64,000 nt of DNA from IMGVR_UViG_3300029922_000001:377499-441498, one strand, 5' to 3'; positions 26,325 to 60,761 are shown, counted from the first letter of the stretch. Translations and numbers: made by a program. The notes: generated by a model not told the origin, from the letters alone.

Positions 26325-29302
26325 TGCAACAGTGGGAATATATAATTTTAAGAATGGGCTATGTTGAACTAAGTTCAACAATTGATGAAGTGGGTAAAAA
26401 TGGTTGGGAACTAGTAAATGTAGTTAGTTTTAGTGATTCAACTGCATTAATGGCATTTTTTAAACGACCATTGGTTGTAGTTGAAGAAGTTGAAGAAAAG
26501 GCTTTAACTCACCGATCAGATAAGTTCATTTGGTATCATGATGAATCATTTTGCAATCGTGCAGATTTGGACAAGTTCGGAGATTGTCCAGTATGTAAAA
26601 TTCATCCAGATACACAATCAGTTTGTGGTAGACACAACCCAAACTATACAGAATAGGGTATAATAAAATCATCATCGCAAGAACTCTGAGATGAAATCTA
26701 AAAGCAGGTAAAAACAAAACAACATGGCATCCAATCTAAAAGCAGATTCGTATTCGTTCTTCTATCGACTTCCAAAGGACAGTCCTGACATCGCCTTGAT
26801 TCTTGAGGTACTTGAGTATTCCAAGCTTGAAGGTGGTCCAATCCCTTATCGTGTTACTCCAAAGGAAACGGTAACTGAGATTTGGCTTGACTCGACTCGT
26901 CTTGAGGATGCACGAAAGTTCGTCTATTAATTTGATTTCCCCAATGGGGGAAACCGAGGTATACTTTGCTTATGGATCGTATTAAACAGAATCGCTTAGA
27001 TAATCAGCGTGATAATTCCACCTTAGACCAAACTCAACGCAAGAGATTAATGGGAACAACACATTGGTTTGCTTTTGTTTCAGGTTGGATTAATGCAGCA
27101 GAAGCTATAGATATTCTTAATGTCTATGCACGAATTGATGAAGCTAATGCGCGTTTTGGATTTCCCCAATAAAGGAATAAAAGGTATACTCTAATCATGG
27201 ATAAACCATTTTCAGTAATTGATGAATTCGAAAACTGCTATTCTCAACATGGAACAAAAGACAAAGCACAAGACAGTATCTATGATCTAGTTGGAGTCTT
27301 TATTGGTGTTCCTTTTGAGATTACTGAAAAATTAGATTGGAATGAAGGTGGTACTAAGTTTCAATATGACAAAATGGCGGTGACACTATAATGACAGGAC
27401 TATCTAAATCTCAAATTAAACGGCTTGATAATCTCCTAGTTAGTGAAAAGGATCATCTAGGATATATCACACGTAGTGAACGTATTCTTAAACGGATTAG
27501 AGCGCGAATTGAGGAAATTCAAAGGTATTGCATTCACGAATTCAATGATGGTGAGAACGTGTGTATTCTTTGTGGGAAGAAAATTCCCCAATAAGGAAAA
27601 TCAAGGTATACTCTGATCGTGGACCCAAACTTGACCCACGGTATTTTCCCTCAAGAGTGCAATAGAACTCCTATTGGATTCATTGAATTAAAAAGGGATA
27701 ATCAAAGGCATTTATATACTTCGCTCACAAAATAGGTTGCAAATCACGAAAAGCGTGATATAATAAATCCATAAGCCGAAAGGATCGGCAAGGAGAATCT
27801 AATGGAAAACACTCTCAAACCAAATACTCAGCAACTAGGCGAAAGTCTTATTATCAGCATCAAGGGGAAGGGGTATGCAGTGACCTCTGTCGAAGAGGTT
27901 TACAATTTGTGCGCTAAGTCAGCAGCGGCAATCAAGAATGTTCTCACTGAACTTGAACGAGCTGAAAATGCACTCGAAAATGATGCTGACGAAACCGTAA
28001 TTCGAGTAACTTGGAGCAAGCCAACTCGCCGATACCCTTCGAAGCCTTGCATGGAATTGGTAAAGATCGTGTGCTTTAATTCAAGCCCAAAGTTTGCAAC
28101 CACAGTGCAGGGAGAACAAGTCGGCAGATCAACACTTTACAGAATGCCCAAAAAGGCTCGAATTGCAAACATTTTTGCAAAACGCAATGAGGCTTATTAC
28201 AAGAGAGCGGAATTGATTCAAGACAGTGCATATAATTAAATAATCCCCAATAGGGGAAACCGAGGTATACTAAGACTATGAAAAAAGCGAAGGTCGAAAA
28301 ACGAGGGAAAACCCTAATCATCAAAATTACTGTTGATCCATTTGCTGGTGGATCGCACACTACTTACAGCGGTTACGGTCTTCATGTTAAGGGAACTAGC
28401 AAGCATAATCGTGTTAGCAATCGACTTGAAGCAAGAAAGGCACAAAGGGGAGATTATGATTAAACTTACTGTAGATAAGAATTCGACAATGGCATCTATC
28501 ACTAGAAGATTGAATGCACTTTTCCCTGGAGAGGATGTTGCACTCATTTTTGATGATAAGCCAACTAAACGTCATTTTGTCTATATGGGTTCTGGTAATC
28601 ATCCAGAAGGTCATCCTTTTATGTATATTAAGAGTGATGAAGTATATAGTAAGAATTAAAAAGACCATTGTGCAAGAAACTAGAATTGTAGTTGATGTAT
28701 TTCAAGACGATCCAGAAAATACGATTTTCGAAGATATTACATTAGATGCAATACACAGAGAATTACCAGGTGTGGATTGGCTAACAGTTGATGTATACTA
28801 TGAAGTGCTTGCAAAAACAGAAGAACAAGGATAATGAAATGGCTAATATCTATGTAATCGAACGTTTATCTCTACATAACAAGGTAAGATTTACAAGTAA
28901 TGATCTAACTATAGAGCTAGACTATAATTTGAAAAATCGAAATTTGCCTGTTAGTTATGAGCAGATAATAGATGATTTAATTGAATTTAGTCCAGAATTC
29001 GAAGAAACACTACATGAGATTATCAACACCCAAAGAACTTTAGATTTTTGTTCAGGTCAGCAATTTTGGGCTGATGATATCAAACGTTTTTTAAGACGGT
29101 AAAAATGGCTTTTAGAACAGATTTAATTATTGAAGCATGTAGATTGACATTGGAAGAAATTCGAGTTCCTACCGAAGATGAACTAAAACATATTATTCCA
29201 GCTATTATTGAATATGCAAATTTTGCTCATTGTCCAATTAATGAAGTAGCACCTTCACTAATTTGTGCTACTCGTTATGCTTTACTTGAAAATCCCCAAT
29301 AG
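26324..29302 (+). other. Run of small hypothetical ORFs: 26324..26656, 26724..26930, 26972..27172, 27197..27391, 27391..27594, 27802..28239, 28278..28463, ~28456..28659, ~28838..29102, 29105..29302
   Basis: Co-directional; most are bounded by the repeated promoter. Confidence 0.65.
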
Positions 29303-29326
29303 ACAAACAAGAGGTATACTCCCAAT

Positions 29327-29812
29327 ATGAAAAGAGTGACTGAAATGAACGGCAATAGGGCTAATGGTATTCGTGGATGTAGAATCACAATTTGGGATAA
29401 CAACAGCAATATTATAGATCGTTTTGTTGTTCCTTCTATGTTTGGTGGAGTTAATTATTGCAAAAAATATCCTAATGGTATATATGGTAAAAGATTTTAT
29501 AATGCTTTAAAAGAAATCCCCAATACTGGGATTCGAGGTATACTCCCAGTATGGAGAATAGTCATGTTTCGAACTTATGCGTACATTTTAAAATTAGATG
29601 CTAATTACACAAATGGTGTTATTGATAGGGAATTCACGGAAGTATCTAATGAAGAAATTCAGTTCTTAACAAAGAAATCATCTAAGGAAAAGCCACTCAC
29701 TCCATTACAATTTAAGTTTGGTGATATGTTCACTTCTAATATCTATTTAGATGGTGATGAATACATTAACACAGAAGATGGTTTAGTTCCTATTGAAGAA
29801 ATCATTCAGTAA
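29327..29812 (+). CDS. Hypothetical protein containing an in-frame internal promoter copy (possible fusion of two cassettes)
   Basis: Codons EIPNTGIRGILP are the promoter element 29515-29544. Confidence 0.55.
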   Translation: MKRVTEMNGNRANGIRGCRITIWDNNSNIIDRFVVPSMFGGVNYCKKYPNGIYGKRFYNALKEIPNTGIRGILPVWRIVMFRTYAYILKLDANYTNGVIDREFTEVSNEEIQFLTKKSSKEKPLTPLQFKFGDMFTSNIYLDGDEYINTEDGLVPIEEIIQ

Positions 29813-29944
29813 GGGAAAGTCTCAGCGTTGAGATCTCCTTTATTTTCCCTATTTCCTTGGATGGTGTTTATCTATACACTAATTAATTGAATTATTCGAA
29901 CAATTCGAAATCCCCAATAGAAGAAATTGAGGTATACTCTGATC

Positions 29945-31180
29945 ATGAAAACAAAAACATTTTCTCGTGAAATTAGTTTAATTAAAGCAGCTAATGAAGT
30001 TTATTCTTTATGTGATAGCTACGGTATTAAAAAAGGATGTTTAGGTGCTTTTGATAAAAACATTAAGCCTTTTGGTTTAAAGAGAGAAGATCTTAAAGAA
30101 ATTTTGAAATATGTTTCTATTCAAAACAAAATTAGAACAAATAGATATAATTTAAGTTTAAAGATAAATTCTAAAAAACAGGGATATACTTTAGTTCCAA
30201 ATATAGTTAAGAAACTTAATGATTTAAAAATTAGGACTATTAGTTATAATGTTAAAAATGTTCTTAGAACATCTAATCTAAAAATTGTATTATCTAATAA
30301 CCCAAATAAGTTTAATGCAACTCATACTTCTACTACTGATTATGGTGGAAGATACCCAGAGACAACACATTATAACACTATTACAGTACCTAGTAATTGG
30401 CGACTAAGAGTGGATAAGTTAGGAATTAGTAATTTAGGTAACATGTTTACATTAGACGCTTTTCCTTGTGAAACCAAAGGTGATTTTAAATTATATTCTG
30501 CAATGTGGATTTCTCAAGGTCGTGGTTATAATTTAAATGTCCATAAAGGTTTTATTGCGGTAAAAGACAATGAATCATGTCATGCATTGACATCTAGTTC
30601 TGCTATTTCTGGATTAAAAAGAAAATTATCTTTAACTAAAGAAGAAAAATTAGCAATGGGATTAAAACTTATTAATTCATCGTTGTCAAAAAAAGTAAAA
30701 CAAAATAATCATCTTTATGTTACTCTTCAAGATGCTTATACTGTAGGTTCCTGTGATAGCGGAATTAGATCATGGTGTAATCATGTGGGTTTAAATTATT
30801 ATGATGGTAAAGCGCCGATTGAATTAGTTATGAAAGGTTATGAATTAGCACCATTATCAGAAGTTAGAAGAACACTTTTATATACACTTAGAAATTCTCC
30901 CCAATAGAAGAAATTGAGGTATACTCGAAACATGAAGATTTTTAAAGACCAATTAATTAATTTATCAGGTTGTAATCAACCTGGTAAAGTCAGAGTTATG
31001 ACTACCATTACTCAGTATGACTTGCGTTATAAGATTTTTGACGCCATTAAGGAAGAGTTAGGTTTACCTGAACTTTCTTTAGAGGTTAGTGCAATTAGCA
31101 TGGATGAAACTGGAAATTGGCATATTGATCTTAATATACCTATTGGCGTTGCAAAAGAATTAGTCGGAAATATTGCCTAG
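29945..31180 (+). other. Hypothetical ORFs 29945..30907 (very basic) and 30932..31180
   Basis: Starts moved from the TTG-AGG-TAT-ACT artefact to the ATG after the -10. Confidence 0.7.
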
Positions 31181-31243
31181 AAAATCCCCAATAAGGAAAA
31201 TTGAGGTATACTAAACACAACGAACGGAGAATACGAAAACAAA

Positions 31244-32194
31244 ATGATTCAACAACTAGCATATACAATCGCCCGAAACGGCAACATTACAGTTTATGTG
31301 AACTTCAATCCTTATCATGTTAACGCTGAAGCGCCAAACTATGAGAAGGTTATGGAAATTCTCAAAAGCGATACCGCGACTAAGATTGATGATCTACTTG
31401 TCGCACTTGACGTAAGAGCGGCTTTGACCAGTCATCTCAGTAACTACATTACCATTGTTGACAATGAGTTGTATTACAAGGATACCGTCATCAACACAAC
31501 CTTGGCGGATCGTATTGTAGAATTCTTTCATAAGGGATATGCGATCAGCAACCTTATTAAGTTTTTCGAACGACTTCAAGCTAACCCTTCAGAAAGGGCA
31601 CAAATTGAACTTTTCAACTTTCTTGAGAAGAACGACTTGCACATTACCGATGATGGTTACTTCCTTGCATATAAGAAGGTAAGGTCTAATTACACTGACT
31701 TGCGAACCGGTACGTTTGACAATAGTGTAGGTGCAACACCTTGGATGGATCGTAACGAATGCGACGATAATGCAGATGAAGATTGTTCTCATGGACTTCA
31801 TGTTGGAACTTACAAGTTTGCTTATGGGTTTAGTAACAATTATGACAATAAGCTTATTCTTGTAAAGGTAGACCCAACGGATTGTGTATCTGTACCTAAG
31901 TCTGATGCAGGAAAGATGCGTGTATGTCAATACTTGGTTATTGCTGATGTCACTGGAAAGGACGGGGTAACTCCTGCTTTTGTTGCAGAATCAACAGTAA
32001 CACAATTGGCTCCAACTCCTACTCCAGTTGTTGCAACTGAAAAGAAGTTGTATCGGGACAAGCAGGGGCACTTTATCTCTAAGGAAAAATATGATGCACT
32101 TCATGTTGTCACTAACCAATTCCCTAATGGGGTAACACTGACAACAAATAAGTTGCCACAACGTGACAGTAAGGGTAGGTTCCTACCTAAGTAA
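31244..32194 (+). CDS. rIIB: rIIB-like protein
   Basis: F.ERLQANPS..A..ELF.FL....L.ITDDG.FLAYK.V...Y.D..TGTFDNSVG....M.R..CDDN....CS.GLHV, VKVDP.D.VSVP.....KMRVC.Y.V; C-terminal RD.KG.F motifs. Confidence 0.9.
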   Translation: MIQQLAYTIARNGNITVYVNFNPYHVNAEAPNYEKVMEILKSDTATKIDDLLVALDVRAALTSHLSNYITIVDNELYYKDTVINTTLADRIVEFFHKGYAISNLIKFFERLQANPSERAQIELFNFLEKNDLHITDDGYFLAYKKVRSNYTDLRTGTFDNSVGATPWMDRNECDDNADEDCSHGLHVGTYKFAYGFSNNYDNKLILVKVDPTDCVSVPKSDAGKMRVCQYLVIADVTGKDGVTPAFVAESTVTQLAPTPTPVVATEKKLYRDKQGHFISKEKYDALHVVTNQFPNGVTLTTNKLPQRDSKGRFLPK

Positions 32195-32272
32195 AAATCC
32201 CCAATGGGGAAAATCAAGGTATACTGGGAATGTAAGAAACATTCTCAGTAACGAGAAGAAAAATAGGAGACT

Positions 32273-34465
32273 TTGAACGGTACTATTAATATGATTCAAA
32301 AAGACACAGCAGGTAACGCAACAGTAGTAGGAATGAACGCGCAATCAGGATTTGCAATCCTTGCATCCGCGAAAGCATTCAAGATTTTGTCATCGGGTAT
32401 TTATAAGAATAAGATTCTTGCCCCAATTCGTGAACTTAGCACTAATGCAATTGACATTCATCGCAAGTTCAATGTTGACCGTCCTTTCGAGGTTCAACTT
32501 CCTAACAATCTTAATCCTCATTTCGTGGTCCGTGACTTTGGACCAGGTTTGTCTAAACTGCAAATTATGGGCGATAAGGAATTGGACATTCAAGGAATTT
32601 ACACTACGTATTTTCTTTCAACTAAGGAATCTGAGGCAGATCAGATTGGTTGTCTTGGATTGGGTACTAAATCCCCATTTGCTTATGTTACGTCTTTCAC
32701 TGTAACCTCTTACTTTGATGGTCTAAAATCAGTGTACGCTATGTACCTTGATGGTGATATGCCAAACGTTAACCTAGTCGGTAGTGAACCTTCTGATGAA
32801 CCCACCGGATTGGAGGTAAGCTTTGGAGTCAATGTCTACGACTTTGGTACGTTCCGAAACGAACTACAGAAACTTTATTCCTTCTGGACTGAGGCTGAGC
32901 GTCCTGTAGTAACTGGACAAACGGTATCTTATACCAATTACATGGAAGGTAAAACTAAGGGTAACGGTTGGTTCCTGTCAGATCAGACATACGGTAATCT
33001 GTTTAGTCGTGGTTACTTCCATGTAGTAATGGGGAATATCGCCTATAAGGTGAACTGTTATGATGGTCCTAATAAGGCTTTTGAAGAGATTGCAGAATAT
33101 AGCAATTTGATCTTCGAATGCGATCTTGGCGAAGTCAACTTTACTGCATCTCGTGAAGAGTTGGAGTTGGACAACAACACGGTTGCCGCAATTGTCAAGC
33201 GAATTGAAGACTTTAAGCAGAGCATTGTTGTTTCATTAGAGGAACAGGTTAACAATGCCGGTAGTCTTTGGAAAGCTAGACATCTTGTTGCAGATTTCAA
33301 AAAGTCTCACTCTCTGGTTAAGCGACATGATTTCAAATATCACGGTATGACTCTACTCTGGAATAATCGTGTTAAGTTCACTAAGACACCAATGGTACTT
33401 TATGTCCGAAATCACGATCAGAAGCTTCACAAGAAACAGGATATTACAAGTTTCTATATCGGAGATTCGTCCCGTAATACAACGTTCTATTTCAATGATC
33501 TTGAAAAGCCACAACATACGCATAGTCGAATGAACTTCCACCTTAGAACTCATAAGACTTCAAATGAAGTAGTATTGATTGACGGGGTAAGCTTCAGGGA
33601 TGCTAAAAGAATCTTTGGACTGTCAAAAGATCAGATCACTAGGGTTTCAACGCTTGACATTCCTGTAAGAACTCCACGAATGCGACGGGATAAGAATTTG
33701 GACTTTGATGATCAAATCGAATTCTGCAATAAGCACATTATGAAGTTAAGCTACTATCGTTGGGACGACTGCGTTCTACCTAAGAGCGAACCGGTTTACT
33801 ACTTTGTTGACCTGAAGGGACAAAAGCCACAATTTGAAGATGAAGAGATCACTAGTTTCGATAACGTAGTGCGATTTATGAGAGAATGCACTAGCTACGA
33901 TGTTACAACAGTGTATGGCGTTCGTGGTCCTGCTAAGAAGCTAGTCGAAAATTCAGATGCTTGGGTAAACATTTATGATCTTTTCAAGGTGGAACTAAAG
34001 AAGTATCTTGATAAGTATCCTCTTGCGGAATATGCAAGTAAGGACTATCTCAAGACTAATGTAATTAAAGAATTGTTGAAGATCAAAGAAGTGTTGGCTT
34101 TGAATCCGGTTACTGAGAATGGTGACATATGCAAGAAGATTACAAAGATTGAGGCTGACGTTATCGTTCCTTCAACCTGGGAATGGAAGATGGATTACTA
34201 CACTTTCCAGCGATTGGCTTATAAGATCGGAGTGAGTTTGCCAGAATCACACAATAAGGACACTACAACTCTTTCACAAGATGTTAAAGATATCCGTGTT
34301 GAATATGCTACACAATTCCCACTAATGCAGCATCTTAGCTATTCAGTTGAGGGTAAGAAGGAATACCTAAGACTTTGGGTAGTCGATCAAGAAGCTAAGG
34401 CACTTGCAAATACAGTTCAAGAATCAAAACTAGAGGATACCGTTCAAGTCTCACTGACAGTCTAG
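32273..34465 (+). CDS. rIIA: rIIA-like protein (N-terminal GHKL ATPase)
   Basis: AFKILSSGIYKNKILAPIREL.TNAID.H, VRDFGPGLS, Y.TYF.STK, IG.LGLG.KSPFAY, SRE.L; 730 aa next to rIIB. Start TTG 32273 or ATG 32291. Confidence 0.9.
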   Translation: MNGTINMIQKDTAGNATVVGMNAQSGFAILASAKAFKILSSGIYKNKILAPIRELSTNAIDIHRKFNVDRPFEVQLPNNLNPHFVVRDFGPGLSKLQIMGDKELDIQGIYTTYFLSTKESEADQIGCLGLGTKSPFAYVTSFTVTSYFDGLKSVYAMYLDGDMPNVNLVGSEPSDEPTGLEVSFGVNVYDFGTFRNELQKLYSFWTEAERPVVTGQTVSYTNYMEGKTKGNGWFLSDQTYGNLFSRGYFHVVMGNIAYKVNCYDGPNKAFEEIAEYSNLIFECDLGEVNFTASREELELDNNTVAAIVKRIEDFKQSIVVSLEEQVNNAGSLWKARHLVADFKKSHSLVKRHDFKYHGMTLLWNNRVKFTKTPMVLYVRNHDQKLHKKQDITSFYIGDSSRNTTFYFNDLEKPQHTHSRMNFHLRTHKTSNEVVLIDGVSFRDAKRIFGLSKDQITRVSTLDIPVRTPRMRRDKNLDFDDQIEFCNKHIMKLSYYRWDDCVLPKSEPVYYFVDLKGQKPQFEDEEITSFDNVVRFMRECTSYDVTTVYGVRGPAKKLVENSDAWVNIYDLFKVELKKYLDKYPLAEYASKDYLKTNVIKELLKIKEVLALNPVTENGDICKKITKIEADVIVPSTWEWKMDYYTFQRLAYKIGVSLPESHNKDTTTLSQDVKDIRVEYATQFPLMQHLSYSVEGKKEYLRLWVVDQEAKALANTVQESKLEDTVQVSLTV

Positions 34466-34512
34466 ATTCTAAGAAAATCCCCAACAATGGGGATTCGAGG
34501 TATATTAATTTT

Positions 34513-35029
34513 ATGAAGAATTCTAAAGTGATTGATTATTTACTATGTTTGTTTGATGGATATCAACATTGGGGAAGAAATCACGAAAAAGATAAATCCG
34601 ATAATAAAATTACTGTTATTCAATTTTATTATCCAAGTACATTTGATAAGTTAATGAATTCTTTATCTAATGGCATTGAAGATGGTGGTCAAATAATTAA
34701 TATTACAGATGAAATTATTGAATTACAACGTTCAGAAGATTTAATCACTATGACTGTTCAGGGTTGGATTTAAAAATCCCCAATAGAAAAATTCGAGGTA
34801 TATTTATTTTATGGGACATATGAGATTAACCTTTGAACAGAAGCAATTGATTAAGAAGCTAGATAAGCAATTGATTGAATTGTCTAAAAATCAAAAAGAG
34901 AATAAGAGAATCATCAATGACACTCTTAAACAGATTAATAATCTGTATAGCTTTTGCGACCATCAATATAAACATTTTAATCATACTGGAGAGTTGATAT
35001 GTGCTTATTGTGGTCACGTTCATGAGTGA
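34513..35029 (+). other. Hypothetical ORFs 34513..34773 and 34811..35029 (C..H...C..CG, like 27391..27594)
   Basis: Each has its own promoter copy. Confidence 0.65.
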
Positions 35030-35072
35030 TTTTAAAAATCCCCAATAAAGAATTAAGAGGTATACTGCCAAC

Positions 35073-35777: not shown

Positions 35778-35779
35778 GA

Positions 35780-35812
35780 TTCAGGGAATGCAAATTCCCT
35801 GAATTAATTTTT
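35780..35812 (+). terminator. Intrinsic terminator
   Basis: TTCAGGGAAT-GCAA-ATTCCCTGAA plus T tract. Confidence 0.8.
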
Positions 35813-36105
35813 TAGCTTTTTATTGAGAACCATCTACTCTATTAGTGTATAGATAAAAGGTTTCCCCGAAAATGGGGAAACCTCCGAAATCCCAGCATTG
35901 ATAAGTCAATTACTCACAGCTAAAGCAGTGGGCTTGTTTTTGGTCGTGATAGGGGTTGCAGTCAGCACCATGACAATATTAGTATTGGGTTGGGTTGTAG
36001 GCATTGGGGTATTATTATTATTGTTTGCTATGGTTAACTGGTTTGTCAACATCTGTTGTCCACGTAAAATCCCCAATAGGTGAATTGAGGGTATACTAGA
36101 AACTT

Positions 36106-36178: not shown

Positions 36179-36202
36179 CGAGATTTATGGTATAATAACA
36201 TC

Positions 36203-41985: not shown

Positions 41986-41999
41986 GGTATACTCTGATC

Positions 42000-51432: not shown

Positions 51433-52023
51433 GGAAAGGAGATAATCCCCAATAAGAAATTCGAAGGTATACTCTAATTATGATTAAATGCTTCAATAAG
51501 ATTCTAAAAGATCATCGTCCTGCTGATCAAGTTTTTAGTGCTGATGAACTTTTTTGGATTACTTGTCTATTGGAAAATCAAAAGCAATATGAAGATCAAT
51601 GGCATGTTGTCTATAAAAATGTAGTGCTTACCACTGAAAACTGCCTTGTAATTTAAAATCCCCAATAAGAAATTCGAAGGTATACTCTGATCATGCTTAC
51701 AGTGATTTTTATTTTCTCAGCGGTTTGTTTTGTGCTATCGTGTAGACCTAAGCCTATTACAAACTTTCAGAAAATCTTTACTGCGCTTTTCTGGATTAGT
51801 TTTGTTGCTTATCTTGTCTGTTTGGTATTTGGAGTTAAATGAATAATATTATCATTAGTTTTATATTGACTATTGTAGGTATGCTTTTTATGCTAGGAAA
51901 CTTTATGTTTACTGACAAAAATAATAAACCTGCATCTACTTTTTGTTTTGGTATTTCCATGCTTTTATTTGGAGTTGCATCGGGTTTGATTTTTGGCTCA
52001 ATTTAACATTAAGGTGATGGTTT

Positions 52024-52428
52024 ATGAAGTCTCGAAAGAAAATTCATTGGATATCAATTACGGAAATTTTAAGCACTTGGGGAAGTTGTGATAGCGAATG
52101 TGCTGGAGAAAACTACCCTGACAATAAGATGCTTACTGAATCAGAATGGCAAGTACTTCTAGATTACAAACGTAAAGAACTTAAATATAAAGAACTCTAT
52201 GAGATTATTAAAAAAGAGGGTTTTAATGAGCCACTTGTCTTTTGCAATAATTGGGGAAGAATACTCCATCTAGATGGTCATCATCGTTTAACTGTTGCTA
52301 TTGATTTAGGATATAAATACATTCCCTATATCAAACGATCTAAAGTAAAAGATATTTGGGTGGATTTTTATGAGGATTTTAGTCACTTTAATTTTGCTCA
52401 TCCTGAAAATCCCCAACCAATAAATTAA
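52024..52428 (+). CDS. Stand-alone ParB/Srx-like domain protein, paralog 2
   Basis: DGHHRLTVAIDLGYKYIPY. Confidence 0.75.
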   Translation: MKSRKKIHWISITEILSTWGSCDSECAGENYPDNKMLTESEWQVLLDYKRKELKYKELYEIIKKEGFNEPLVFCNNWGRILHLDGHHRLTVAIDLGYKYIPYIKRSKVKDIWVDFYEDFSHFNFAHPENPQPIN

Positions 52429-52777
52429 AGGTATACTCTATTCATGGATACAGTTAAAGAACAGAATGAAGTGTTTGATGAACACGTTAGTAGACAACTT
52501 AAATCAAGGCTTACCTTTGGTCTTAAAGCGTGGATTCTACTTGAAGTTACCCGAAATACCAGTGGATTAGTAGACCTTGAAGGTTATCCTTGGCATGAGT
52601 TTCGGAATCCTTTTGATATCTACATGAGCGATGTTGAAGAGTTTGGGCAAAAGATTGGCGTCTTGAGTCTATATGAAGATCAAACTTATCACATTAATGA
52701 TGCCAAACGTCATGAACTGCTTGAATGGATGGAATACGCATAATCCCCAATACTTGAACTAGAGGTATACTCTATTC

Positions 52778-53188
52778 ATGTCAAGGTTAATTGAACGAAT
52801 AGAGTGGATTTCCATCGAAGATATTACCGAAAATGGTTGGGGTAGTGTTGATAGTAAAGAAATTGATATTGATTTTCAAAGATACATTATGCTTAACGAA
52901 AGAGAATGGAAACAACTTCTTGACTTGAAGCGGGAAGATAAAAAGTACCCCAAACTTCTAGCTAGTGTTAAGGCAAATGGCTTATTAGTGCCAGGTAATT
53001 ACATTATCCACGAGGGAATGTATTTTCACGGCAATGGTCATCACCGCCTAGCGGCGGCAATTGATTTAGGTTTCAAAAGACTACCTTATATTCAAGTACC
53101 AGGACCTAGACAACTTGCATGGCATTGGAGTAAGAAGATGTTTGAAAAAGCAAATTTAATGGAATATGCTCATGGATTTCCCCAATGA
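52778..53188 (+). CDS. Stand-alone ParB/Srx-like domain protein, paralog 3
   Basis: NGHHRLAAAIDLGFKRLPY. Confidence 0.75.
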   Translation: MSRLIERIEWISIEDITENGWGSVDSKEIDIDFQRYIMLNEREWKQLLDLKREDKKYPKLLASVKANGLLVPGNYIIHEGMYFHGNGHHRLAAAIDLGFKRLPYIQVPGPRQLAWHWSKKMFEKANLMEYAHGFPQ

Positions 53189-53497
53189 GAAAATCGAAGG
53201 TATACTTAACACAACATGAAGAACATGACGAATTTTAAGAACATTCTCGCCACTGCCAACTCTTTCACCGCGAAGCGATCTCGTGGTAATGCCGCTCTCA
53301 AGGGACTTCTCGCTTTGGTAGTCATTGCGGTAGTTATTTTCCTGTGCTACATTGGTCCGATTTGGACAATCGGCGCTCTCAACCTCCTGTTTGGACTCCA
53401 TATTGCGGTAACGCTTCAGACTTGGCTTGCTACCTTATGGCTTATGATTGTAGTCGCCGCTAAGAACTACAGCAAGTAAATCACCTTTGACAAAATC

Positions 53498-53530
53498 GAA
53501 AGGGTACCCGATGGTACCCTTTCTCTATTT
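53498..53530 (+). terminator. Intrinsic terminator
   Basis: GAAAGGGTACC-CGAT-GGTACCCTTTC. Confidence 0.75.
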
Positions 53531-54426
53531 GTCCCCAATAAAAGAATTAGAGGTATATTTAGATCATGCTTGAATCGAAGATTAAATGGAGAGATGCATT
53601 TGGTAACGAAGGTTATCATAGAGATGTAAAAGTTGCATACGTTCATCAACATGGCAACTTCACCGCTTTTGTGTATCCTACTGGAAAACCTTCTTATGCA
53701 TCACCACTAGATCAAATTAAGTCCTCTGTCAGAAATATTGAAGAAGGAAAATTGTGGTGTGAACAAAATTTTGACATTGATGTTTTCGAAAAAGCAAACT
53801 TAATACCTTTGTGTTTTTCAGAAACCCATAGAGCTATTATGGTGGAAAAAAGAGAAGTCTATATTCCTACATTTGGGATAGTTTGGATTAACGAAAATCG
53901 AACAGATCAGATTGTGGAAATTACAAAAACTTCGAATTTACTCACTCTAGAACAATATCAAGAACGATATCCAGATACAATATTATTGGGTTATGGTCGT
54001 CGGATTTATAATCCCCAATAGAAAAATTTGAGGTATACTAGCATCATGAACGTAATTCACACTTATCGACAGAACCTTAAAGAGATTGCCACAGAAGGTG
54101 AAATTCTCATTAGCCTTTGGCGAATGGCTCACCGATCTGACTACATTCCGCGATTTGGTATCGAACACTATAAGCTAACCATTACAGAAATTTGGGTACA
54201 GCTTGATGTTCTCTATCGAACTTATGGTATCAATTATAATCCTGATATTCGATTCCGATATCTGGAAGATTATTACTTTCATGAAATTGATGCAATGAAT
54301 TTTGAGTTCTCAGTTTCTTATGATCCAGATGACGAACTCAGTAAGATAAAGTGTGTGACTACTGCACTTTTATCACAGCTATATGGTAAGCCTTGTTATT
54401 TCTTGATCCCACAAGAGTAAAAGAGT

Positions 54427-54453
54427 AACCGGAGAGAATCCGGTTTTCTTTTT
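54427..54453 (+). terminator. Intrinsic terminator
   Basis: AACCGGA-GAGAA-TCCGGTT plus T tract. Confidence 0.75.
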
Positions 54454-54569
54454 GCTTCCACGATTCATAATTCCTATATATTAGTGTATAGATGCATAGG
54501 AATTATGAAAATGGGGAAATAATGATCAGTAAAAATCCCCAATGATCAAAAATGAGGTATACTAAGATC

Positions 54570-54965
54570 GTACAAGACGGTAAGGTGGCTGAAAGGAAAT
54601 CCCCAAAAGTCTATAAACTAATTTAGAATTGAATACATATAGTAACTTTCAGGGTGTGCGGTGACGGGTTAAAATCGTACACACCTTTCAATGTACACGA
54701 TAAATCTTTGTGGCTCAACGAATAAGATGCAGTGAGAGTTTTATCCCGTTTTAGAATCTACCCTAGTGAATAAGGTCAAAATCCCCAATGAGATGGCAAA
54801 TCTCCCAGATAAGGTAATCCATGTATATCCATGATATGATCGTTGACCACGTATCGTCTAAATGTGTAAAGAACTGATGAAGATCCTTTAGCCCATTTAT
54901 GGGTTATAAATAGAAAGGTAATGAGGGTTGTTGTGCGGCTTAAATCGTATAGTCAGCCCTTTAAC
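54570..54965 (+). ncRNA. Candidate structured ncRNA (about 390 nt) in its own promoter cassette
   Basis: The promoter is followed by GTA instead of ATG; no ORF of 60 aa or more; two related hairpins at 54651-54688 and 54924-54962. Confidence 0.45.
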
Positions 54966-56497
54966 TTTTTATCCCCAATAAAAGAATTACAGGTATACTC
55001 CAATTATGAGATTCAAGACAACAGTTAGCAAGTTTGAGAATGGTGAATGGACTATCATTGAGGGTTCAGTTTATCGTAATTGGTCAAAGCAACCAACTGA
55101 GAAAATGATCAGCAATGCAATTGCCAGTATCTTGAAAGACCTACAGACTATCATTCCTGGTTTTAGGGAATATGGAGTGGAGAAGATCATTTAAGAATCC
55201 CCAATAGGGGAATTAAGGTATACTCTAAATGTGATGAATAGTTATCATCCAAAAAGATAAGGGTTTAAGTTTATTTTTGCAAAAGCTGTACGTTGGTTAG
55301 TAACCAATAAAAGAATATTCTAATAACTAAAGAAGAAAGATTGATAGAGTAGCGTCTATTAAAATAAATGTATATCCTTATCACATTTTCCCCAACACTC
55401 AAATTAGAGGTATACTATATCCATGAAAACATACAATCTTGGAGATTTGGTTATTGTCAAAGGAACAACGAATAATCCATATGTAACTGGTGGAATTTCA
55501 GGACCTGATAGAGCAAGGGTCATAAACTCTCTAAAAGAGCAAAAGACAGTAAGTGACGATTATGAATTCTGGATTGCTCCTACTAATGGTGGTGCATTTA
55601 AAGTGCAACAGCATCTTATCTCTTTCCAAAATCCAATAGTGTTGCAGATTCATGCTCAAAATCCCCAATAAAAGAATTAGAGGTATACTAGAAACATGGA
55701 AAACTTTAATCAGAAACTTCAAGACTTTCTCGCTCTAGCTGAAAAGGAAACTCAACACCGAATGCATATGGAAGGTTATGACAGTCTTCTAGCAAGTGCG
55801 GAAAAGGCAGGACGACGGGCATACTATTACTTTACCTGTGAACCAGGATTGAAGTTTGTCAAAGTGTGGAAAGAAGCACAAGGTGACAAGTTTATTCACA
55901 GTTTTGTTGAAAAAAATACTGGAATCATCTATGGCGCGGATAGTTGGAAGAAACCCAATTTTAAGAGAGCATACGGCACTCTAGACACCATTAATGATTG
56001 GTATTGGGGTGATTATTACGGGGTAAGTAAGACAGGGGTTAATACACTAGTACCAAAAGAAAAGCGTCGTAAGCCTTGATAAATCCCCAATAGGGGGAAT
56101 TAAGGTATACTACCGGTATGGAAAACTTCAATACCGGTGGGTCTGTTTCTCTAGCCGCTTTACATCAACGTCAAGCGGCTACTAAGGCTTTATTAGAGTC
56201 GTTGTATGGTGAAGTCTTAGCTAAAAAGGTTCACACTGATCGTAAATATTTAAATTTACTATTACATGTTCTTGATTCTGATGGTAAAGATCTAGAAGCA
56301 GTGGAGAATTTACGTACAATGCTTGAAAAGGATCTGGTATACTACTAACATGAGTGACGCAAGAATCGAATAGATTGGTTTAATCTGTGGAACCTTAATT
56401 GCAGCATTGGCTGCTGGCTTTGGATTGAATATCCTTTTAGCTTTGATTTTAGGTCTTTAAAAATACCCAATAAGAAAATCGAAGGTATACTCTATAT

Positions 56498-56815
56498 ATG
56501 AAACAACATGAACTGTATGATGAACTATGTTTGACTGAAGCATCACAAGCAGAAGGACTTAGCTTTGATGTTGGTTTTCATTCAGATTTAATTGAATTAT
56601 ATAGACTTGATGTTAAATCTGAGTTTAGATGGCAAGGACGCGCTACTAGATTCTTAAAGGAATTAACTGCAATTGCTGATAGGAATAATTTACCTATTGA
56701 GTTAGAAGTTGGTTCTGGTACTGATGAAATAGACATAGTAGAGGATCTTCCAGCTTTTTACAATAAGTTTGGTTTCGAGTGGGTGGATACTTATATGCGT
56801 AGAATCCCCCAATAA
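56498..56815 (+). CDS. GNAT-like acetyltransferase
   Basis: IEL..L.V..EFR.QG.AT.FL.EL...AD.....I.L, L..FY.KFGF. Confidence 0.75.
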   Translation: MKQHELYDELCLTEASQAEGLSFDVGFHSDLIELYRLDVKSEFRWQGRATRFLKELTAIADRNNLPIELEVGSGTDEIDIVEDLPAFYNKFGFEWVDTYMRRIPQ

Positions 56816-57113
56816 AAAAATTAGAGGTATACTCTAAATATGAACATTCTAAAGAAGATTCTCAAAGCTATTGGATGTAAACAATCTACGCTTTGTAAAT
56901 TTGGTTATCATACACTAGCTTGGTATTCAAAAGCTGATTGTGAAATGTATTTCATTCAGAAGCGCAAATTTGGTCCTTTAGTAGAGTGCGGTTGTTGTCG
57001 TAAGATTTTACATATTGAAGAAGTTAACGTTGATGAGGTTGAGTATCTTCATGGATTATATCCAATAAATTAAGAATTATCCCCAATAGGAATTTTAAAG
57101 GTATACTCTAAAC

Positions 57114-57479
57114 ATGAAAGTTTTAATATCTGATGATGACCAAAATCTTTTAGATAGTATGGTTCGCTATTTAGAGCGTTATGATATCGAAGTACATGGT
57201 TTTCTTTACAATGATCTTGCTATGAATGATCTTGAGGCAGGTTTTACACCTGACTTCATTTTGACAGATTATGACTATGGTTGCGGACGACGAAATGGAG
57301 TAGATTATATTAAAGCACTTAGGTCAAAACATTTTACTGTACCTATCGCTTTAGTTTCAGGTTCAAGTAAACAACAATTAATGAAGGAAATCGAAGGTAT
57401 TGACAATGTTGTTGTAATTGAAAAATCAATGAATTTATGTAAAATGATTTTTAGGTTTCTTAATTTAAATCCCCAATAG
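57114..57479 (+). CDS. Single-domain response regulator (CheY-like receiver)
   Basis: KVLISDDD acidic pocket, PDFILTDY phosphoacceptor, NG...I..LR, PIALVSG, EK. Confidence 0.9.
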   Translation: MKVLISDDDQNLLDSMVRYLERYDIEVHGFLYNDLAMNDLEAGFTPDFILTDYDYGCGRRNGVDYIKALRSKHFTVPIALVSGSSKQQLMKEIEGIDNVVVIEKSMNLCKMIFRFLNLNPQ

Positions 57480-57503
57480 GAATTTTAGAGGTATACTCTA
57501 AAC

Positions 57504-57704
57504 ATGATTAAAAAGACTCTTCGACAAGGATTCATTGTTGACAAGCACGGTGTTCAACGATGGTATAAGGATGATTTTATGCATAATCTTAATGGTCCTG
57601 CGGCTGTTTTCCCTGATGGTAGGGTAGCTTACTACATTAACGGTACACGAATTCCACGTAAGACGTTCGGACAAATGCTGGCTAAAGCAAGGAAAAAGAA
57701 GTAA
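57504..57704 (+). CDS. Small protein with a W-Y...H..NGPA...DG....Y.NG repeat unit
   Basis: Repeat motif common in phage hypothetical proteins. Confidence 0.6.
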   Translation: MIKKTLRQGFIVDKHGVQRWYKDDFMHNLNGPAAVFPDGRVAYYINGTRIPRKTFGQMLAKARKKK

Positions 57705-57931
57705 TGCCAGAAACCCCACCGCCAATTACAAGTATGCAACTTCAAGCTTTTTGCTTACTATTTCAACAATCTCTTACTTAATGTATTGGGGAACAAATTC
57801 GAAACAAGATACTTGTTTTCTTGTTCTTACTATTGCATTTTTGGTGTTGGGTCTAAGTGTACTTATGTGCAAATACCTGATACCACCAGACTAGTTTTCC
57901 CCAATAAGAAAATCGAAGGTATACTCTTTTC

Positions 57932-58366
57932 ATGGCTAATTTTCCTACTCTGCAAGACGTGCATTGGGTTTCAATTGAAGAGATTTTAAACTCTTGGCTT
58001 TCAATTGATAGTAAAGCACTTAAAACATCTACGGACATTTCAAAAGAGTTGACCTATAAAGAATGGGAGATACTACTTACAAGAAAACGTGAAGAGTGTG
58101 AATATGAAGAGATTAGACCTATCATTGAACAAGAGGGGTTTAGAATGCCTTTGGTTTACGAAATTCAAGATCGAACTGGAAAATTCTGTCATTGTCAGGG
58201 ACATCATAGACTAGCTTGTGCAATAGATTTAGGATATAAATATTTGCCATACGTTCATTATCAATGGGCTGATGGTGGTTGTTGGCACATTGCTGATTTT
58301 GAGTGGGATACATTAATCCATCCTGAAAATCCCCTGCCTACTAATCCAATTTTGACTGATAAATAA
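57932..58366 (+). CDS. Stand-alone ParB/Srx-like domain protein, paralog 4
   Basis: QGHHRLACAIDLGYKYLPY; C-terminal LIHPENPLPTNP is identical to paralog 1. Confidence 0.75.
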   Translation: MANFPTLQDVHWVSIEEILNSWLSIDSKALKTSTDISKELTYKEWEILLTRKREECEYEEIRPIIEQEGFRMPLVYEIQDRTGKFCHCQGHHRLACAIDLGYKYLPYVHYQWADGGCWHIADFEWDTLIHPENPLPTNPILTDK

Positions 58367-59204
58367 AAATCCCCAATGGGGAAAACCGAGGTATACTTAG
58401 AACATGAAAACACTTTCAACACAGACAAGAGATCGAAAAGGACTACTCACTGCTTACGGATTTGTCGATGGTGGCACCGAAACAAGACAAAAGGATAATA
58501 CAAAGATCACGATTCATCGTCCTGAAGATACAGAAAACTACATTCTGACAGGAATGTACGACGGCAAGAAGGTTGGAATTGACGCAGGTAAGAGTCTGGA
58601 GAATGCGCGAAAGATGGTAAGCAAGTATCTCCGGGGCGAAATCAAGTAAGTTTATATCTGTCATCTGTAGAAACAATAAGACAATGACTCCCCCTAAAGG
58701 GGGAAATCCCCAATGCCTCTAATTGAGGTATACTATATTTGAGGAAATCGAAAACTATGAATAACTACGATCTATGGCAAACAACAGAATGGCAACGAAA
58801 AAATGGATTTGCATCTAAAGGTGATAAAGTAACTTTTAAAGCCAACGATGGTTATGATGGTGACATTCAACGCGCTAAAGATGCGGGACTAGTAATTGGT
58901 GAAAGTTATATTGTCACAAGAACAGAAGTTGGACGTTGTAATAGTTATCATATTCTAGAGGGATTTGGTTACAGTTTCAATATTGTAATGTTTGAACAAA
59001 TTCCAGATCCTAAAGCGATCATCAAGTGTGTAGTAACCGAAATTGGACAAGATACGCTCCGTGGAGACTACAAGGCAGAGGATTTTGCTAATTTGTTACG
59101 TACAGCGGCAGATGCAATTCTAAGTCCTGATAGTAATCATTACTATTATGAATTCACGTTCACAAACGGGGATTGTATCTATCAAATCACTGCAAAGAAG
59201 TAAG

Positions 59205-59235
59205 AATAGGGGAACTCTTCGGAGTTTCCCTATTT
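59205..59235 (+). terminator. Intrinsic terminator whose 3' arm is the left box of the 40-bp element
   Basis: AATAGGGGAACTC-TTCG-GAGTTTCCCTATT. Confidence 0.8.
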
Positions 59236-60761
59236 CGGTTCGAGTTCCTTATCTATACACTAATAAGGAACATTAAAACGTACACTTAAAATCCCCAATA
59301 GATGAATTTAAGGTATACTCTATTCATGGGAAAGAAACCAATTACACCATCTAAGCCACCATTTGAGGTTGGAGATATAGTCTCTAGCCGACATGGTGAA
59401 TATGCTGGGTTACTGTTAAAAATAGAATCTATTTACCCTTCTGAAAGATATGGTTCTGGATATGGCGCTCGTTGTGTTGGAGCTATCACTGGAAAATATA
59501 TTAAAGAAAGCTATGTTGATTCTGCATGGTTTGTGAAAGTAGAAGATCCAAAATTGTCACCTTATCGCGTTGAATTATTATTGCGAAAGTCAGACAACTA
59601 TTTCCATATTTTGGCTGCTGAAGCGATCAAGCAACTACGACTTCAAAAATCCCCAATAAAGAAATAAGAGGTATACTCTGATCATGGCACAAAAACAAAA
59701 GGTCACCGTGGATACGCCTTATTTGAATAGTTGGGCGCATCAACAGGAACAAGAGCAAAAAGCTATTGAAGATGAAAGTAAATTGCCATTCAAACAGATG
59801 ATTGAAGCAAGAAAGAAGCGTTTGTCATCGACTATCGAAAGTGCCAAAAAATGTACAGTCATTTTTGAGAACCAAAACATTGCTTGGTACATGAAACTTT
59901 TTTACTGTGACAGAGAAAGCGCAAGACAGGAACTTGGTTATCGTCCAGCTATTGCAACTTTAACTTTCGAAGAATATCGCAATAGTGCTTTACGATAATC
60001 CCCAATAGAAAATTAAGAGGTATACTTAAAACATGAACACTCTCCCGAACATCGTTCTCGCCGGTTTGAATCGCTATCAGAATCCAGCCCCTAAGAAGGT
60101 AATCACGAGGGAACAACAGATTGAGCGGCTTCTCAATCGTTATGCGTCGGCTGTTTTGACTTTTCGCAAGCCTGAAACCTGGAAGGTTTGGGCAAAAGAG
60201 AGGGACGCGATTATTGCCGAAGCTGGTAAGCTAATCGGCAAGAACTACAACGGTAACAACGTTGTAACAATCTGGGAGCATGAGACTCCAAAGGATGAAT
60301 TGGACTACATTGTTGCAAAAGAGTATCACACTTGGAGCAATAATCCGTGCCGTCCTTGGAATTCAGGCGACTCGGAGCATCTAGAGAATCGTGTGGTTTT
60401 TGATATCGCATTTCTTGCGAAGAAGAAATGTTATCACATTTACTACGATCACTCGTAAGGGGGAGAAATCCCCAATAAAAGAATTGGAGGTATACTAAGA
60501 TCATGTCACATTTCGAAAATGAATATCGTTCTCCTGGTTACTGGCTTGATGCCAGAGAAAGAATGGAATCAGGCATGTGTCCTGAATGTGGCGAATGGTT
60601 GAAACTTGAAGAAATTTGCCCATGTAAAGAAGATTGCGATTGTGCTACTGAGTACGCTAATATGCAAAGAGATTATCTTGCAGCAGATTGGCAAGACGCA
60701 GAAGAAGGATTGGGAAGTTACGTAAAATCCCCAACGATCTAATTAGAGGTATACTCAAAAC

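What the first reader, a model, noticed from the sequence alone, without database searches (positions are those of the whole stretch)
26936..60760. Neighbouring promoter copies are identical, including the variable spacer: footprint of cassette insertion or excision
Seen: a 40-nt perfect repeat (40026-40065 / 40287-40326) flanks one 69-aa gene. Similar pairs: 31 nt at 46295/46651, 33 nt at 46992/47286, 32 nt at 51444/51657, 29 nt at ~29911/30898, and 39 nt with one mismatch at 57079/57469 flanking the response regulator. Distant copies differ in the spacer. Inference: genes enter or leave as promoter-bounded units by Campbell-type recombination between promoter repeats (or local gene conversion), giving an integron-like but integrase-free gene array. 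Promoter-associated repeats (PeSLs) have been proposed to mediate shuffling in T4-like phages, but this motif is different.
Basis: partly seen in the sequence, partly recalled or inferred. Interest (0 to 1): 0.82.

Follow-up and report, generated by a model that had tools for sequence, protein, structure and literature searches.

The report
Promoter repeats bound swappable phage gene cassettes
In a roughly 520-kb phage from peat, about 80 near-identical promoters each sit directly against a small gene, and comparison with related phages shows that genes are gained, lost, swapped and reordered exactly at these promoters, much like a mechanism already described in T4-like phages.

Summary
All six repeat pairs sit at the stated coordinates. 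Neighbouring promoters share their variable spacer far more often than chance: 7 adjacent pairs have at most 1 mismatch against 1.1 expected (p about 2e-4), and 5 of the 12 identical-spacer pairs are immediate neighbours (p = 6e-6).

- **Polymorphism at the window end.** The window ends at an assembly fork. A 1,162-bp two-gene segment is present or absent, and the junction lies inside the shared -10 box of two promoters.
- **Comparison with a relative.** Against a relative 74-96% identical in DNA, 18 of 61 promoter-to-promoter units are missing. These include all 7 units bounded by near-identical promoters (Fisher p = 7e-5).
- **Breakpoints.** 61% of alignment breakpoints fall within 12 nt of a promoter core, against 10% expected (p = 3e-23).
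- **Other changes.** Cassettes are also replaced and reordered.

Identical flanks are not what a simple Campbell-type exchange between different promoters predicts. They fit an insertion that duplicates the resident promoter core, or local conversion between neighbours.

The mechanism matches promoter-early stem-loop (PeSL) shuffling described for T4-like phages (2010, 2014). The differences are a different motif, no ribosome-binding site and no obligatory stem-loop. I rate it a new variant of a known kind.

The parts
26936..64000 (+). Array of about 70 promoter-plus-gene units. The motif is ATCCCCAAY-N12-GGTATACT-N6-ATG. It continues upstream at lower density (12 more copies between 604 and 25214) and downstream into the next contig.
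   Evidence: The ATG lies exactly 6 nt after the -10 box in 64 of 82 copies.
29911..29939 (+). Left copy of the identical 29-nt promoter core pair (right copy at 30898-30926).
29945..30907 (+). 320-aa ORFan cassette between identical cores. It is absent from the close relative L062 and from the outgroup L064, so it was probably gained in this lineage.
30898..30926 (+). Right copy of the 29-nt pair.
34513..34773 (+). 86-aa cassette between promoters 34477-34506 and 34776-34804, which share their right halves including the rare -10 variant TATATT. It is absent in L062 and L064. The junction lies in ATTTTATG.
40026..40065 (+). Left copy of the 40-nt perfect repeat (core plus leader plus ATGA).
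40065..40271 (+). 68/69-aa ORFan between the 40-nt repeats. In the relative, this gene and the preceding 77-aa gene are replaced by one unrelated 71-aa gene.
40287..40326 (+). Right copy of the 40-nt repeat. It is conserved in the relative with 1 mismatch.
41563..41985 (+). 140-aa cassette between near-identical cores (anchors 41549/41986, 1 mismatch). It is absent in L062. It shows weak similarity to the C-terminal part of HNH endonucleases and sits just after an HNH gene (41110-41538).
46295..46681 (+). Identical 31-nt cores (46295-46325 and 46651-46681) flanking an 83-aa ORFan (46332-46583) that is absent in the relative (L066/L067).
46992..47318 (+). Identical 33-nt cores (46992-47024 and 47286-47318) flanking an 89-aa ORFan (47030-47299) that is absent in the relative. 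The same core recurs at 59997-60026.
51444..51688 (+). Identical 32-nt cores (51444-51475 and 51657-51688) flanking a 58-aa ORFan (51480-51656) that is absent in the relative.
55405..56111 (+). Two cassettes, an 82-aa gene (55423-55671) and a DUF7717 gene (55696-56079), whose order is reversed in the relative L073.
57079..57507 (+). 39-nt cores with 1 mismatch (57079-57117 and 57469-57507) flanking the 121-aa response-regulator receiver gene (57114-57479). The gene is absent in the relative, whose single promoter has a different core.
63972..64000 (+). Promoter at the end of the window and contig, where the assembly forks. It is the left boundary of a 1,162-bp present/absent segment in the same population.

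Best explanation
The region is the hyperplastic early-gene region of a roughly 520-kb peat phage that carries rIIA/rIIB and RNA-ligase genes. Nearly every small gene is preceded by a promoter-like element whose -10 box lies 6 nt from the start codon. The two conserved boxes of this element (ATCCCCAAY and rGGTATACT, sometimes also the ATG) act as dispersed short homologies. The phage's general recombination and replication machinery exchanges or switches templates at these boxes.

Shown:
- Deletions, insertions, replacements and reorderings of single [leader-gene] units between close relatives have their junctions in these boxes.
- One such deletion is segregating within the sampled population.

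Inferred:
- An insertion needs two exchanges, one with each donor promoter flanking the incoming gene. Each exchange can fall in the -35 box or in the -10 box/ATG.
- This predicts four outcomes: left core resident and right new; left new and right resident; both new; and both resident. In the last case the first exchange is in the -10 box and the return is in the -35 box of the same resident promoter, which duplicates its spacer.
- All four classes are seen. The 'both resident' class produces identical neighbouring promoters.
- Identical neighbours are therefore mostly young insertion scars. Some local conversion between neighbouring promoters adds to them.
- Repeated insertion at one promoter builds runs of identical cores.
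For: 1. **Within-population indel.** The long form has a first promoter core, then 1,162 bp with two genes, then a second core with a different spacer. The short form has the left spacer joined to the right leader, so the crossover lies inside the shared AAGAGGTATACT. Both forms occur in one assembly (L030 and L033). Parts of the segment are present in the relative, so the short form is a deletion.
2. **Comparison with the relative.** 18 of 61 units are absent, including 7 of 7 bounded by near-identical cores against 11 of 54 others (Fisher p = 7.3e-5). In three-way alignments the relative equals the W-left upstream flank, then the promoter, then the W-right downstream sequence.
3. **Breakpoints.** 39 of 64 alignment breakpoints lie within 12 nt of a core, against 10% expected (p = 3e-23).
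4. **All four flank classes occur.**
   - Both resident: 29931/30918, 41549/41986, 46318/46674, 47016/47310, 51466/51679, 40048/40309, and L073 5509/5812.
   - Left resident only: the insertions at W 37782 and 45591, and 34499/34797.
   - Right resident only: the insertions at W 57918 and 48382.
   - Both new: the insertions at W 36466 and 59312, and 57100/57490.
5. **Run of identical cores.** The relative has six consecutive promoters with the same 29-nt core in front of unrelated genes with different leaders. They lie in the same hotspot as the polymorphism.
6. **Polarity.** The 320-aa and 86-aa cassettes are absent from both the relative and the outgroup L064, which favours gain.
7. **Reordering and relocation.** The 82-aa and DUF7717 cassettes are reordered. 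The 72-aa gene after rIIA lies elsewhere in L064.
8. **Mosaic divergence.** Fourfold-site divergence between orthologous cassettes ranges from 0.00-0.03 to 0.68.
9. **Not tandem duplication.** The flanked genes are not paralogues.
Against: - The reciprocal test is weak. In the relative, 4 of 10 identical-neighbour units flank genes that W also has. Insertion scars therefore cannot be the only source of identity.
- Orthologous spacers differ by only about 5% between the two phages. The identical pairs cannot be dated as younger than the split, so deletion in the relative (favoured by identity) remains possible for the pairs without an outgroup.
- The two-exchange model is inferred from end products only.
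- Some differences are not promoter-bounded: a GIY-YIG gene insertion, a 139-nt and a 51-nt indel, and several left breakpoints at stop codons.
- Promoter activity itself is untested.
Confidence: 0.72

Rival explanations
1. Local gene conversion comes first. Neighbouring promoters are homogenised by short-patch conversion or unequal exchange because they are close together. The resulting 29-40-nt perfect direct repeats then make the enclosed gene prone to deletion. The relative would then have lost these genes rather than W having gained them.
For: - At orthologous positions with unchanged genes, cores differ between the two phages and match a neighbour in one of them. Relative L066 705 and 1009 both carry ACTCAATTAAGA, while W 45287 and 45591 carry AGCGGAATAAGA and ACTCGAATAAGA. 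Relative L073 2396 and 2619 are identical, while W 54992 and 55217 differ.
- The only event with clear polarity inside the population is a deletion.
- The identical pairs cannot be dated as younger than the split.
Against: - The segregating deletion used two promoters with different spacers, so identity is not needed.
- The 320-aa cassette is absent from both the relative and the outgroup, which favours gain.
- A run of six identical cores in front of unrelated, lineage-specific genes in an insertion hotspot is more simply explained by repeated duplicative insertion.
- All 7 of 7 units would have to have been lost in one lineage.
Confidence: 0.3
2. Campbell-type integration of excised mini-circles, as proposed for PeSLs, with a strong preference for a genomic promoter whose whole core is identical to the circle's. 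That gives 29-40 nt of perfect homology instead of 8-10 nt, so the flanks are identical from the start.
For: - Identical cores exist at distant loci and could serve as such addresses: 28264/38888; 47016 and 47310 with 60019; 53552/55682; 56484/57918.
- The classes with one resident and one new core fit simple Campbell integration or excision.
- Mini-circles were demonstrated experimentally for PeSLs (PMC2839356).
Against: - Paralogous ParB-like genes carry different cores that match their neighbours rather than each other. The core therefore goes with the location, not with the gene.
- The 'both new' class cannot arise from a single circle integration.
- No circles were observed here.
Confidence: 0.2
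3. Neighbouring genes share the spacer for functional reasons, such as the same expression timing or strength or a regulator-binding site, with no recombinational meaning.
For: - Some spacer types recur. A GGGG-containing spacer that can pair with the CCCC of the -35 box occurs in 11 of 82 copies against a 1.6% background.
- Orthologous spacers are fairly conserved between relatives.
Against: - The identity is exact over all 12-13 variable positions, and in two pairs it extends through the leader to ATGA.
- It is confined to immediate neighbours.
- It coincides 7 of 7 with presence/absence differences.
- The flanked genes are unrelated ORFans.
Confidence: 0.04
4. Dedicated mobile elements (homing endonuclease genes or a site-specific enzyme cutting in the promoter) insert the cassettes and create a target-site duplication of the promoter.
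For: - A GIY-YIG gene and a DUF723 gene are relative-specific insertions.
- An HNH gene sits next to the 140-aa cassette, which itself resembles the C-terminal part of an HNH endonuclease.
- The -10 box contains the 6-bp palindrome GTATAC, read directly from the sequence.
Against: - Most cassettes are small ORFans with no nuclease domain.
- The duplicated length varies from 29 to 40 nt, and its ends coincide with the conserved boxes rather than with a fixed stagger.
- The GIY-YIG insertion is not at a promoter.
- No recombinase family is recorded among the array genes.
Confidence: 0.08
5. The pattern comes from tandem duplication of promoter-plus-gene units followed by divergence, or from an assembly artefact.
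For: Paralogue families do exist in the window: four tandem genes at 14136-16587 and four ParB-like genes.
Against: - Genes on either side of the identical promoters show no similarity.
- The same arrangement appears in independent JGI, ENA and Logan assemblies from several samples.
Confidence: 0.01

Closest known systems
PeSL (promoter-early stem-loop) mediated modular shuffling in T4-like phages (Arbiol et al. 2010, PMC2839356; Comeau et al. 2014, PMC4122927)
   Same: - Dozens of repeated early-promoter elements lie upstream of ORFans in hyperplastic regions.
- Insertions, deletions, replacements and one ORF displacement between closely related phages have junctions in or next to the elements.
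- No dedicated integrase is known, and the process is attributed to the phage's own recombination system.
- G-run/C-run stem-loops overlap the -35 box in some copies.
   Different: - The motif is unrelated. The -35 region is ATCCCCAAY rather than TTGACA-like, the -10 is TATACT, and no exact match exists in 185,579 reference genomes.
- There is no Shine-Dalgarno sequence. The ATG is 6 nt from the -10 box, implying leaderless mRNAs.
- Only 17 of 82 copies can form a CCCC/GGGG stem-loop, so the terminator half is not a constant part.
- The conserved part is about 29 nt in two boxes rather than about 100 nt.
- The host phage is roughly 520 kb and only distantly T4-like (rIIA at most 36% identical to cultured phages).
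- In the passages I read, the PeSL papers do not report identical flanking elements or runs of identical cores. A search of PMC2839356 found no occurrence of 'duplication' or 'gene conversion'.
- Mini-circles, shown experimentally for PeSLs, were not tested here.
Botstein/Campbell modular evolution through conserved linker sequences, as summarised in PMC2839356
   Same: Short conserved intergenic sequences act as joints where unrelated modules are exchanged by homologous recombination.
   Different: Here the joint is the promoter itself, the module is a single small gene, and the density is one joint per roughly 480 bp.
Integron gene-cassette arrays
   Same: A one-directional array of small, mostly unknown genes that are gained and lost singly at repeated boundary sites, with a hotspot where insertions accumulate.
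   Different: No integrase, attI or attC was found. Every cassette has its own promoter instead of sharing one. The boundaries are promoter boxes used by homology rather than by site-specific recombination.

Membership tests
PeSL elements of T4-like phages | Repeated promoter-like motif, many copies, concentrated in a hyperplastic region upstream of ORFans | tested here: met
   There are 82 copies on one strand in 64 kb. Most downstream genes have no family match.
PeSL elements of T4-like phages | Promoter close to the sigma-70 consensus (TTGACA-like -35, N17, TATAAT-like -10) | tested here: not met
   The -10 TATACT fits. The -35 position reads ATCCCC/TCCCCA, unlike TTGACA and unlike the variants listed in PMC4122927. 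Promoter activity was not assayed. A tRNA-Arg gene begins 8 nt after one -10 box, which supports a transcriptional role.
PeSL elements of T4-like phages | Stem-loop (terminator/attenuator) as a constituent of the element | tested here: not met
   Only 17 of 82 copies have a GGGG run placed to pair with the CCCC of the -35 box: 11 in the spacer and 6 upstream, against backgrounds of 1.6% and 2.8%. This is enriched but not general.
PeSL elements of T4-like phages | Shine-Dalgarno sequence and start codon at the 3' end of the element | tested here: not met
   The start codon lies 6 nt after the -10 box in 64 of 82 copies, leaving no room for a ribosome-binding site.
PeSL elements of T4-like phages | Indel and replacement junctions between close relatives lie in or beside the elements | tested here: met
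   In one search, 39 of 64 breakpoints lie within 12 nt of a core (p = 3e-23).
PeSL elements of T4-like phages | Mini-circles carrying one chimeric element plus the enclosed ORF | not testable with these tools
All runs found earlier were held only as assembled contigs.
Integron | Tyrosine-recombinase integrase with attI, and attC sites bounding promoterless cassettes | tested here: not met
   No integrase or resolvase Pfam family is recorded for the genes called in window 36.3-64 kb or in the relatives' contigs. Each cassette has its own promoter. The rest of the genome was not examined.
Tandem gene duplication array | Neighbouring units are paralogous | tested here: not met
   There are no blastp hits at 1e-3 between genes on either side of the identical promoters. 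The six genes behind identical cores in L071 are unrelated.

The most novel reading that the evidence does not exclude
The identical 29-40-nt flanks and the run of six identical cores may be the signature of a dedicated insertion process that duplicates its target and is aimed at the promoter core. One example would be an enzyme or replication-restart event that recognises the GTATAC palindrome in the -10 box or the CCCC/GGGG hairpin. Very large phages would then have their own integron-like gene-capture system, in which the promoter doubles as the attachment site and each insertion automatically supplies the new gene with a leaderless promoter.
Probability: 0.12. Interest if true: 0.85.

Novelty: new variant of a known kind. 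Interest (0 to 1): 0.55.

Why it matters
- **Generality.** Promoter-mediated modular shuffling, described so far for a few cultured T4-like phages, also operates in an uncultured roughly 520-kb peat phage lineage with a quite different, leaderless promoter. It operates at high density: about a third of the units differ between phages that share 97% identical rIIA.
- **A sequence-only marker.** Neighbouring promoters with identical spacers mark lineage-specific cassettes.
- **A concrete model.** The four-outcome exchange model can be tested.
- **A practical point.** The 441-kb contig ends exactly at such a polymorphic promoter, so these elements can fragment assemblies of huge phages.

Tried and rejected
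- **Close relatives among cultured phages.** None at DNA level, and rIIA is at most 36% identical.
- **Motif scan of IMG/VR.** Only the source contig carries many copies.
- **Motif scan of 185,579 reference genomes.** No match.
- **Literature search for the motif strings.** Only unrelated primer sequences.
- **Tandem-duplication origin.** Rejected by all-against-all blastp.
- **Gradual decay of spacer similarity with distance.** Not seen. The mean effect is at lag 1, and exact identities cluster within 6 copies.
- **Dating the identical pairs from spacer divergence.** Not informative, because orthologous spacers differ by only about 5% (my comparison of the lists).
- **Fixed offset of contig starts.** Two short contigs from sister samples (L038, L042) both start exactly 140 nt upstream of a promoter. 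I could not explain this and did not use it.
- **Context of the 175-aa gene at 40323.** The same arrangement in 9 places, so there is no variation around the 40-nt repeat within the peat population.

Full report
**What the window is.**
- The window is the last 64 kb of a 441,498-bp metagenome contig from peat. Spacing of motif matches in locus L014 and contig ranges give window position = contig position - 377,498.
- An independent ENA assembly holds the same phage on a 521,591-bp contig.
- The window encodes rIIB (31244-32194), rIIA (32273-34465), two RNA ligases, a sigma-like protein and an ArdC-like protein.
- No cultured phage is close. rIIA is at most 36% identical to any.

**The element.**
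- The motif ATCCCCAAY-N12-GGTATACT occurs 82 times on the + strand and once on the - strand.
- In 64 of 82 copies an ATG follows the -10 box after exactly 6 nt. There is no room for a ribosome-binding site, so the transcripts are expected to be leaderless.
- One copy sits 8 nt in front of a tRNA-Arg gene. This argues that the element acts in transcription rather than translation.
- 13 upstream genes read through the -35 box and stop on a TAA or TAG formed at its end, giving proteins that end in PQ.
- 17 copies have a GGGG run that can pair with the CCCC of the -35 box.
- The same motif and spacing are used by a distant relative whose rIIA is only 57% identical (L064).
- No exact match exists in 185,579 reference bacterial and archaeal genomes.

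**The observation.**
- The identity is confined to the promoter, running from about the -35 box to the -10 box. In two pairs it extends through the leader to ATGA.
- The flanks and the neighbouring genes are unrelated.
- Shuffling the order of the copies gives 1.1 adjacent pairs with at most 1 spacer mismatch, against 7 observed (p = 2e-4).
- Of the 12 pairs with identical spacers, 5 are immediate neighbours (p = 5.9e-6) and 9 lie within six copies (p = 3.4e-6).
- Mean similarity does not decay smoothly with distance.

**Variation inside the peat population.**
- The window ends on the last base of the -10 box of the promoter at 63972-64000.
- Two other contigs of the same assembly begin with the same 127 nt and diverge immediately after that box.
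- One of them (L030, start of a 78-kb contig) is a short form. The other (L033) is a long form that the ENA 521-kb contig also follows.
- The long form has 1,162 bp more, carrying two small genes, bounded by two promoters with different spacers. The short form has the left promoter's spacer joined to the right promoter's leader, so the junction lies in the shared AAGAGGTATACT.
- The short form occurs in at least three other assemblies and the long form in at least one other.
- Parts of the extra segment are present in a related phage, so the short form is a deletion.
- This fork is why the contig, and hence the window, ends there.

**Comparison with a close relative.**
- A search with rIIA found a 97% identical protein on scaffolds from another study. 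Searches with two further proteins found the same relative's scaffolds for other parts of the window.
- Together they align to window 28187-63771 at 74-96% nucleotide identity.
- Of the 61 promoter-to-promoter units that can be compared, 18 are missing from the relative.
- All 7 units bounded by near-identical promoters are among the missing, against 11 of 54 others (Fisher one-sided p = 7.3e-5).
- In three-way alignments the relative's single promoter carries the upstream flank of the left W copy and the leader and gene of the right W copy.
- Across all alignment breaks, 39 of 64 lie within 12 nt of a promoter core, against 10% expected (p = 3e-23).
- The relative in turn has its own extra cassettes inserted at W promoters 36466, 37782, 45591, 48382, 54992, 57918, 58727 and 59312.
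- At 39810-40269, two W genes and the extra promoter copy are replaced by one unrelated gene.
- The order of the 82-aa and DUF7717 cassettes is reversed.
- Fourfold-site divergence of shared cassettes ranges from 0.00-0.03 (rIIA: 10 of 293 sites) to 0.68. This points to exchange of whole cassettes with more distant lineages.

**Why neighbours are identical.**
- A single Campbell-type exchange between a circle and a resident promoter leaves one resident and one incoming spacer. On its own it cannot give identical flanks.
- I sorted the lineage-specific cassettes by whether each flanking core matches the single core at the empty site. All four classes occur: both resident (7 cases, which are the identical neighbours), left only (3), right only (2-3), and neither (3-5).
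- This is the expected result if an insertion needs two exchanges or template switches, one with each donor promoter, and each falls independently in the -35 box or in the -10 box/ATG. Leaving the resident promoter at its -10 box and returning at its own -35 box duplicates the resident spacer.
- Repeated insertion at one promoter would build runs of identical cores. The relative shows such a run: six consecutive promoters with the same 29-nt core, different leaders and unrelated genes, in the same ArdC-UvrD hotspot as the polymorphism.
- ParB-like paralogues carry cores that match their neighbours rather than each other. The core therefore follows the location, not the gene.
- The 320-aa and 86-aa cassettes are missing from both the relative and the outgroup L064, which favours gain.
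- This model is an inference from end products only.

**Limits and the main rival.**
- In the relative, 4 of 10 identical-neighbour units flank genes that W shares. At two of these loci, W has different cores at the orthologous positions. Some conversion between neighbouring promoters, or loss followed by re-insertion, must therefore also occur.
- The reciprocal association (5 of 10 against 20 of 58, my count) is not significant.
- Orthologous spacers differ by only about 5%, so the identical pairs cannot be shown to be younger than the split.
- Not all differences are promoter-bounded. Exceptions are a GIY-YIG gene on the opposite strand, a DUF723 gene, a 139-nt indel and a 51-nt in-frame indel.

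**Comparison with what is known.**
- Arbiol et al. 2010 (PMC2839356) and Comeau et al. 2014 (PMC4122927) described PeSLs in three pairs of T4-like phages. PeSLs are repeated early promoters with stem-loops in hyperplastic regions.
- They reported indels, replacements and an ORF displacement at the elements. For RB49/phi1 they demonstrated mini-circles. They compared the system with integrons and noted that no integrase is known.
- The present system works in the same way.
- It fails three structural features of a PeSL: a sigma-70-like -35 box, a constant stem-loop and a Shine-Dalgarno sequence.
- It adds two things I did not find in those papers: target-core duplication giving identical flanks, and runs of identical cores.
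- I therefore rate it a new variant of a known kind. It is interesting to phage genomicists, but the principle is not surprising.

Noticed in passing
window 604-63975 (all promoter copies); tRNA-Arg at 36106-36179: The start codon lies exactly 6 nt after the -10 box in 64 of 82 copies, implying leaderless mRNAs on a genome-wide scale in this phage. One copy sits 8 nt before a tRNA-Arg gene. The same architecture is found in a relative with only 57% identical rIIA (L064).
   Followed up: partly
window 35841-35881, 42683-42723, 47886-47926, 54480-54520, 61098-61138 (+); reverse-complement copies near 29870-29883 and 59251-59264; also L033 about 420-440 and L053 about 11330-11345: There is a second repeat family, ATTAGTGTATAGAT, usually followed by a GGGGAAA-type hairpin. 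It lies in the longer intergenic gaps and occurs in both orientations. Some copies sit at the edges of indels. Its function is unknown; it could be a terminator or another promoter class.
   Followed up: no
window, e.g. genes ending at 27172, 29302, 30907, 41538, 45276, 47299, 53188, 55671, 57479: Thirteen genes read through the next promoter's -35 box and stop on the TAA or TAG formed at its end, so their proteins end in PQ. Proteins in the relative (L071) end the same way (NPQ). The promoter thus supplies the stop codon for the upstream gene.
   Followed up: partly
window 64000 (= end of the 441,498-bp contig); L030, L033, L053: The contig, and hence the window, ends exactly at a promoter because the assembly graph forks there between the long and short forms. 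The ENA assembly gives one 521,591-bp contig, so the genome is about 520 kb.
   Followed up: yes
window 44842-45276, 52024-52428, 52778-53188, 57932-58366; L071 9704-10183: There is a family of four diverged paralogues with a ParB-like GHHRL motif (37-43% identical to each other). A fifth member lies in the relative's hotspot. Each has a different promoter core.
   Followed up: partly
window 14136-16587: Four tandem paralogous genes (41-48% identical, 153-175 aa) lie outside the finding's range.
   Followed up: no
L062 9596-10270 (- strand) and 11436-12320; window 41110-41538 and 41563-41985: The relative carries a GIY-YIG gene on the opposite strand and a DUF723 gene that the window lacks. 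The window has an HNH gene followed by a 140-aa cassette that resembles the C-terminal part of HNH endonucleases and is absent in the relative. Homing-type mobility may add to the turnover.
   Followed up: partly
L041 5604-5654 versus L022: A 51-nt in-frame deletion inside a gene distinguishes two peat samples. It is not promoter-related.
   Followed up: yes
window 29327-29812: A 161-aa open frame runs through the promoter at 29516-29544. In the relative only the last 82 codons form a gene, starting 13 nt after that promoter's -10 box. The W-specific 409-bp insert (29105-29513) has apparently fused an extra N-terminal part in frame. The outgroup L064 has two copies of the 82-aa gene, and the non-syntenic copy is 77% identical.
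   Followed up: partly
L038 and L042 (contigs from sister samples = window 40148-46472 and 50700-53767): Both contigs start exactly 140 nt upstream of a promoter's ATCCCC. I could not explain this coincidence.
   Followed up: no
window 31244-34465: rIIB lies upstream of rIIA and is short (316 aa). From my own knowledge, T4 has the order rIIA then rIIB. The order seen here is kept in the relative and in L064.
   Followed up: no
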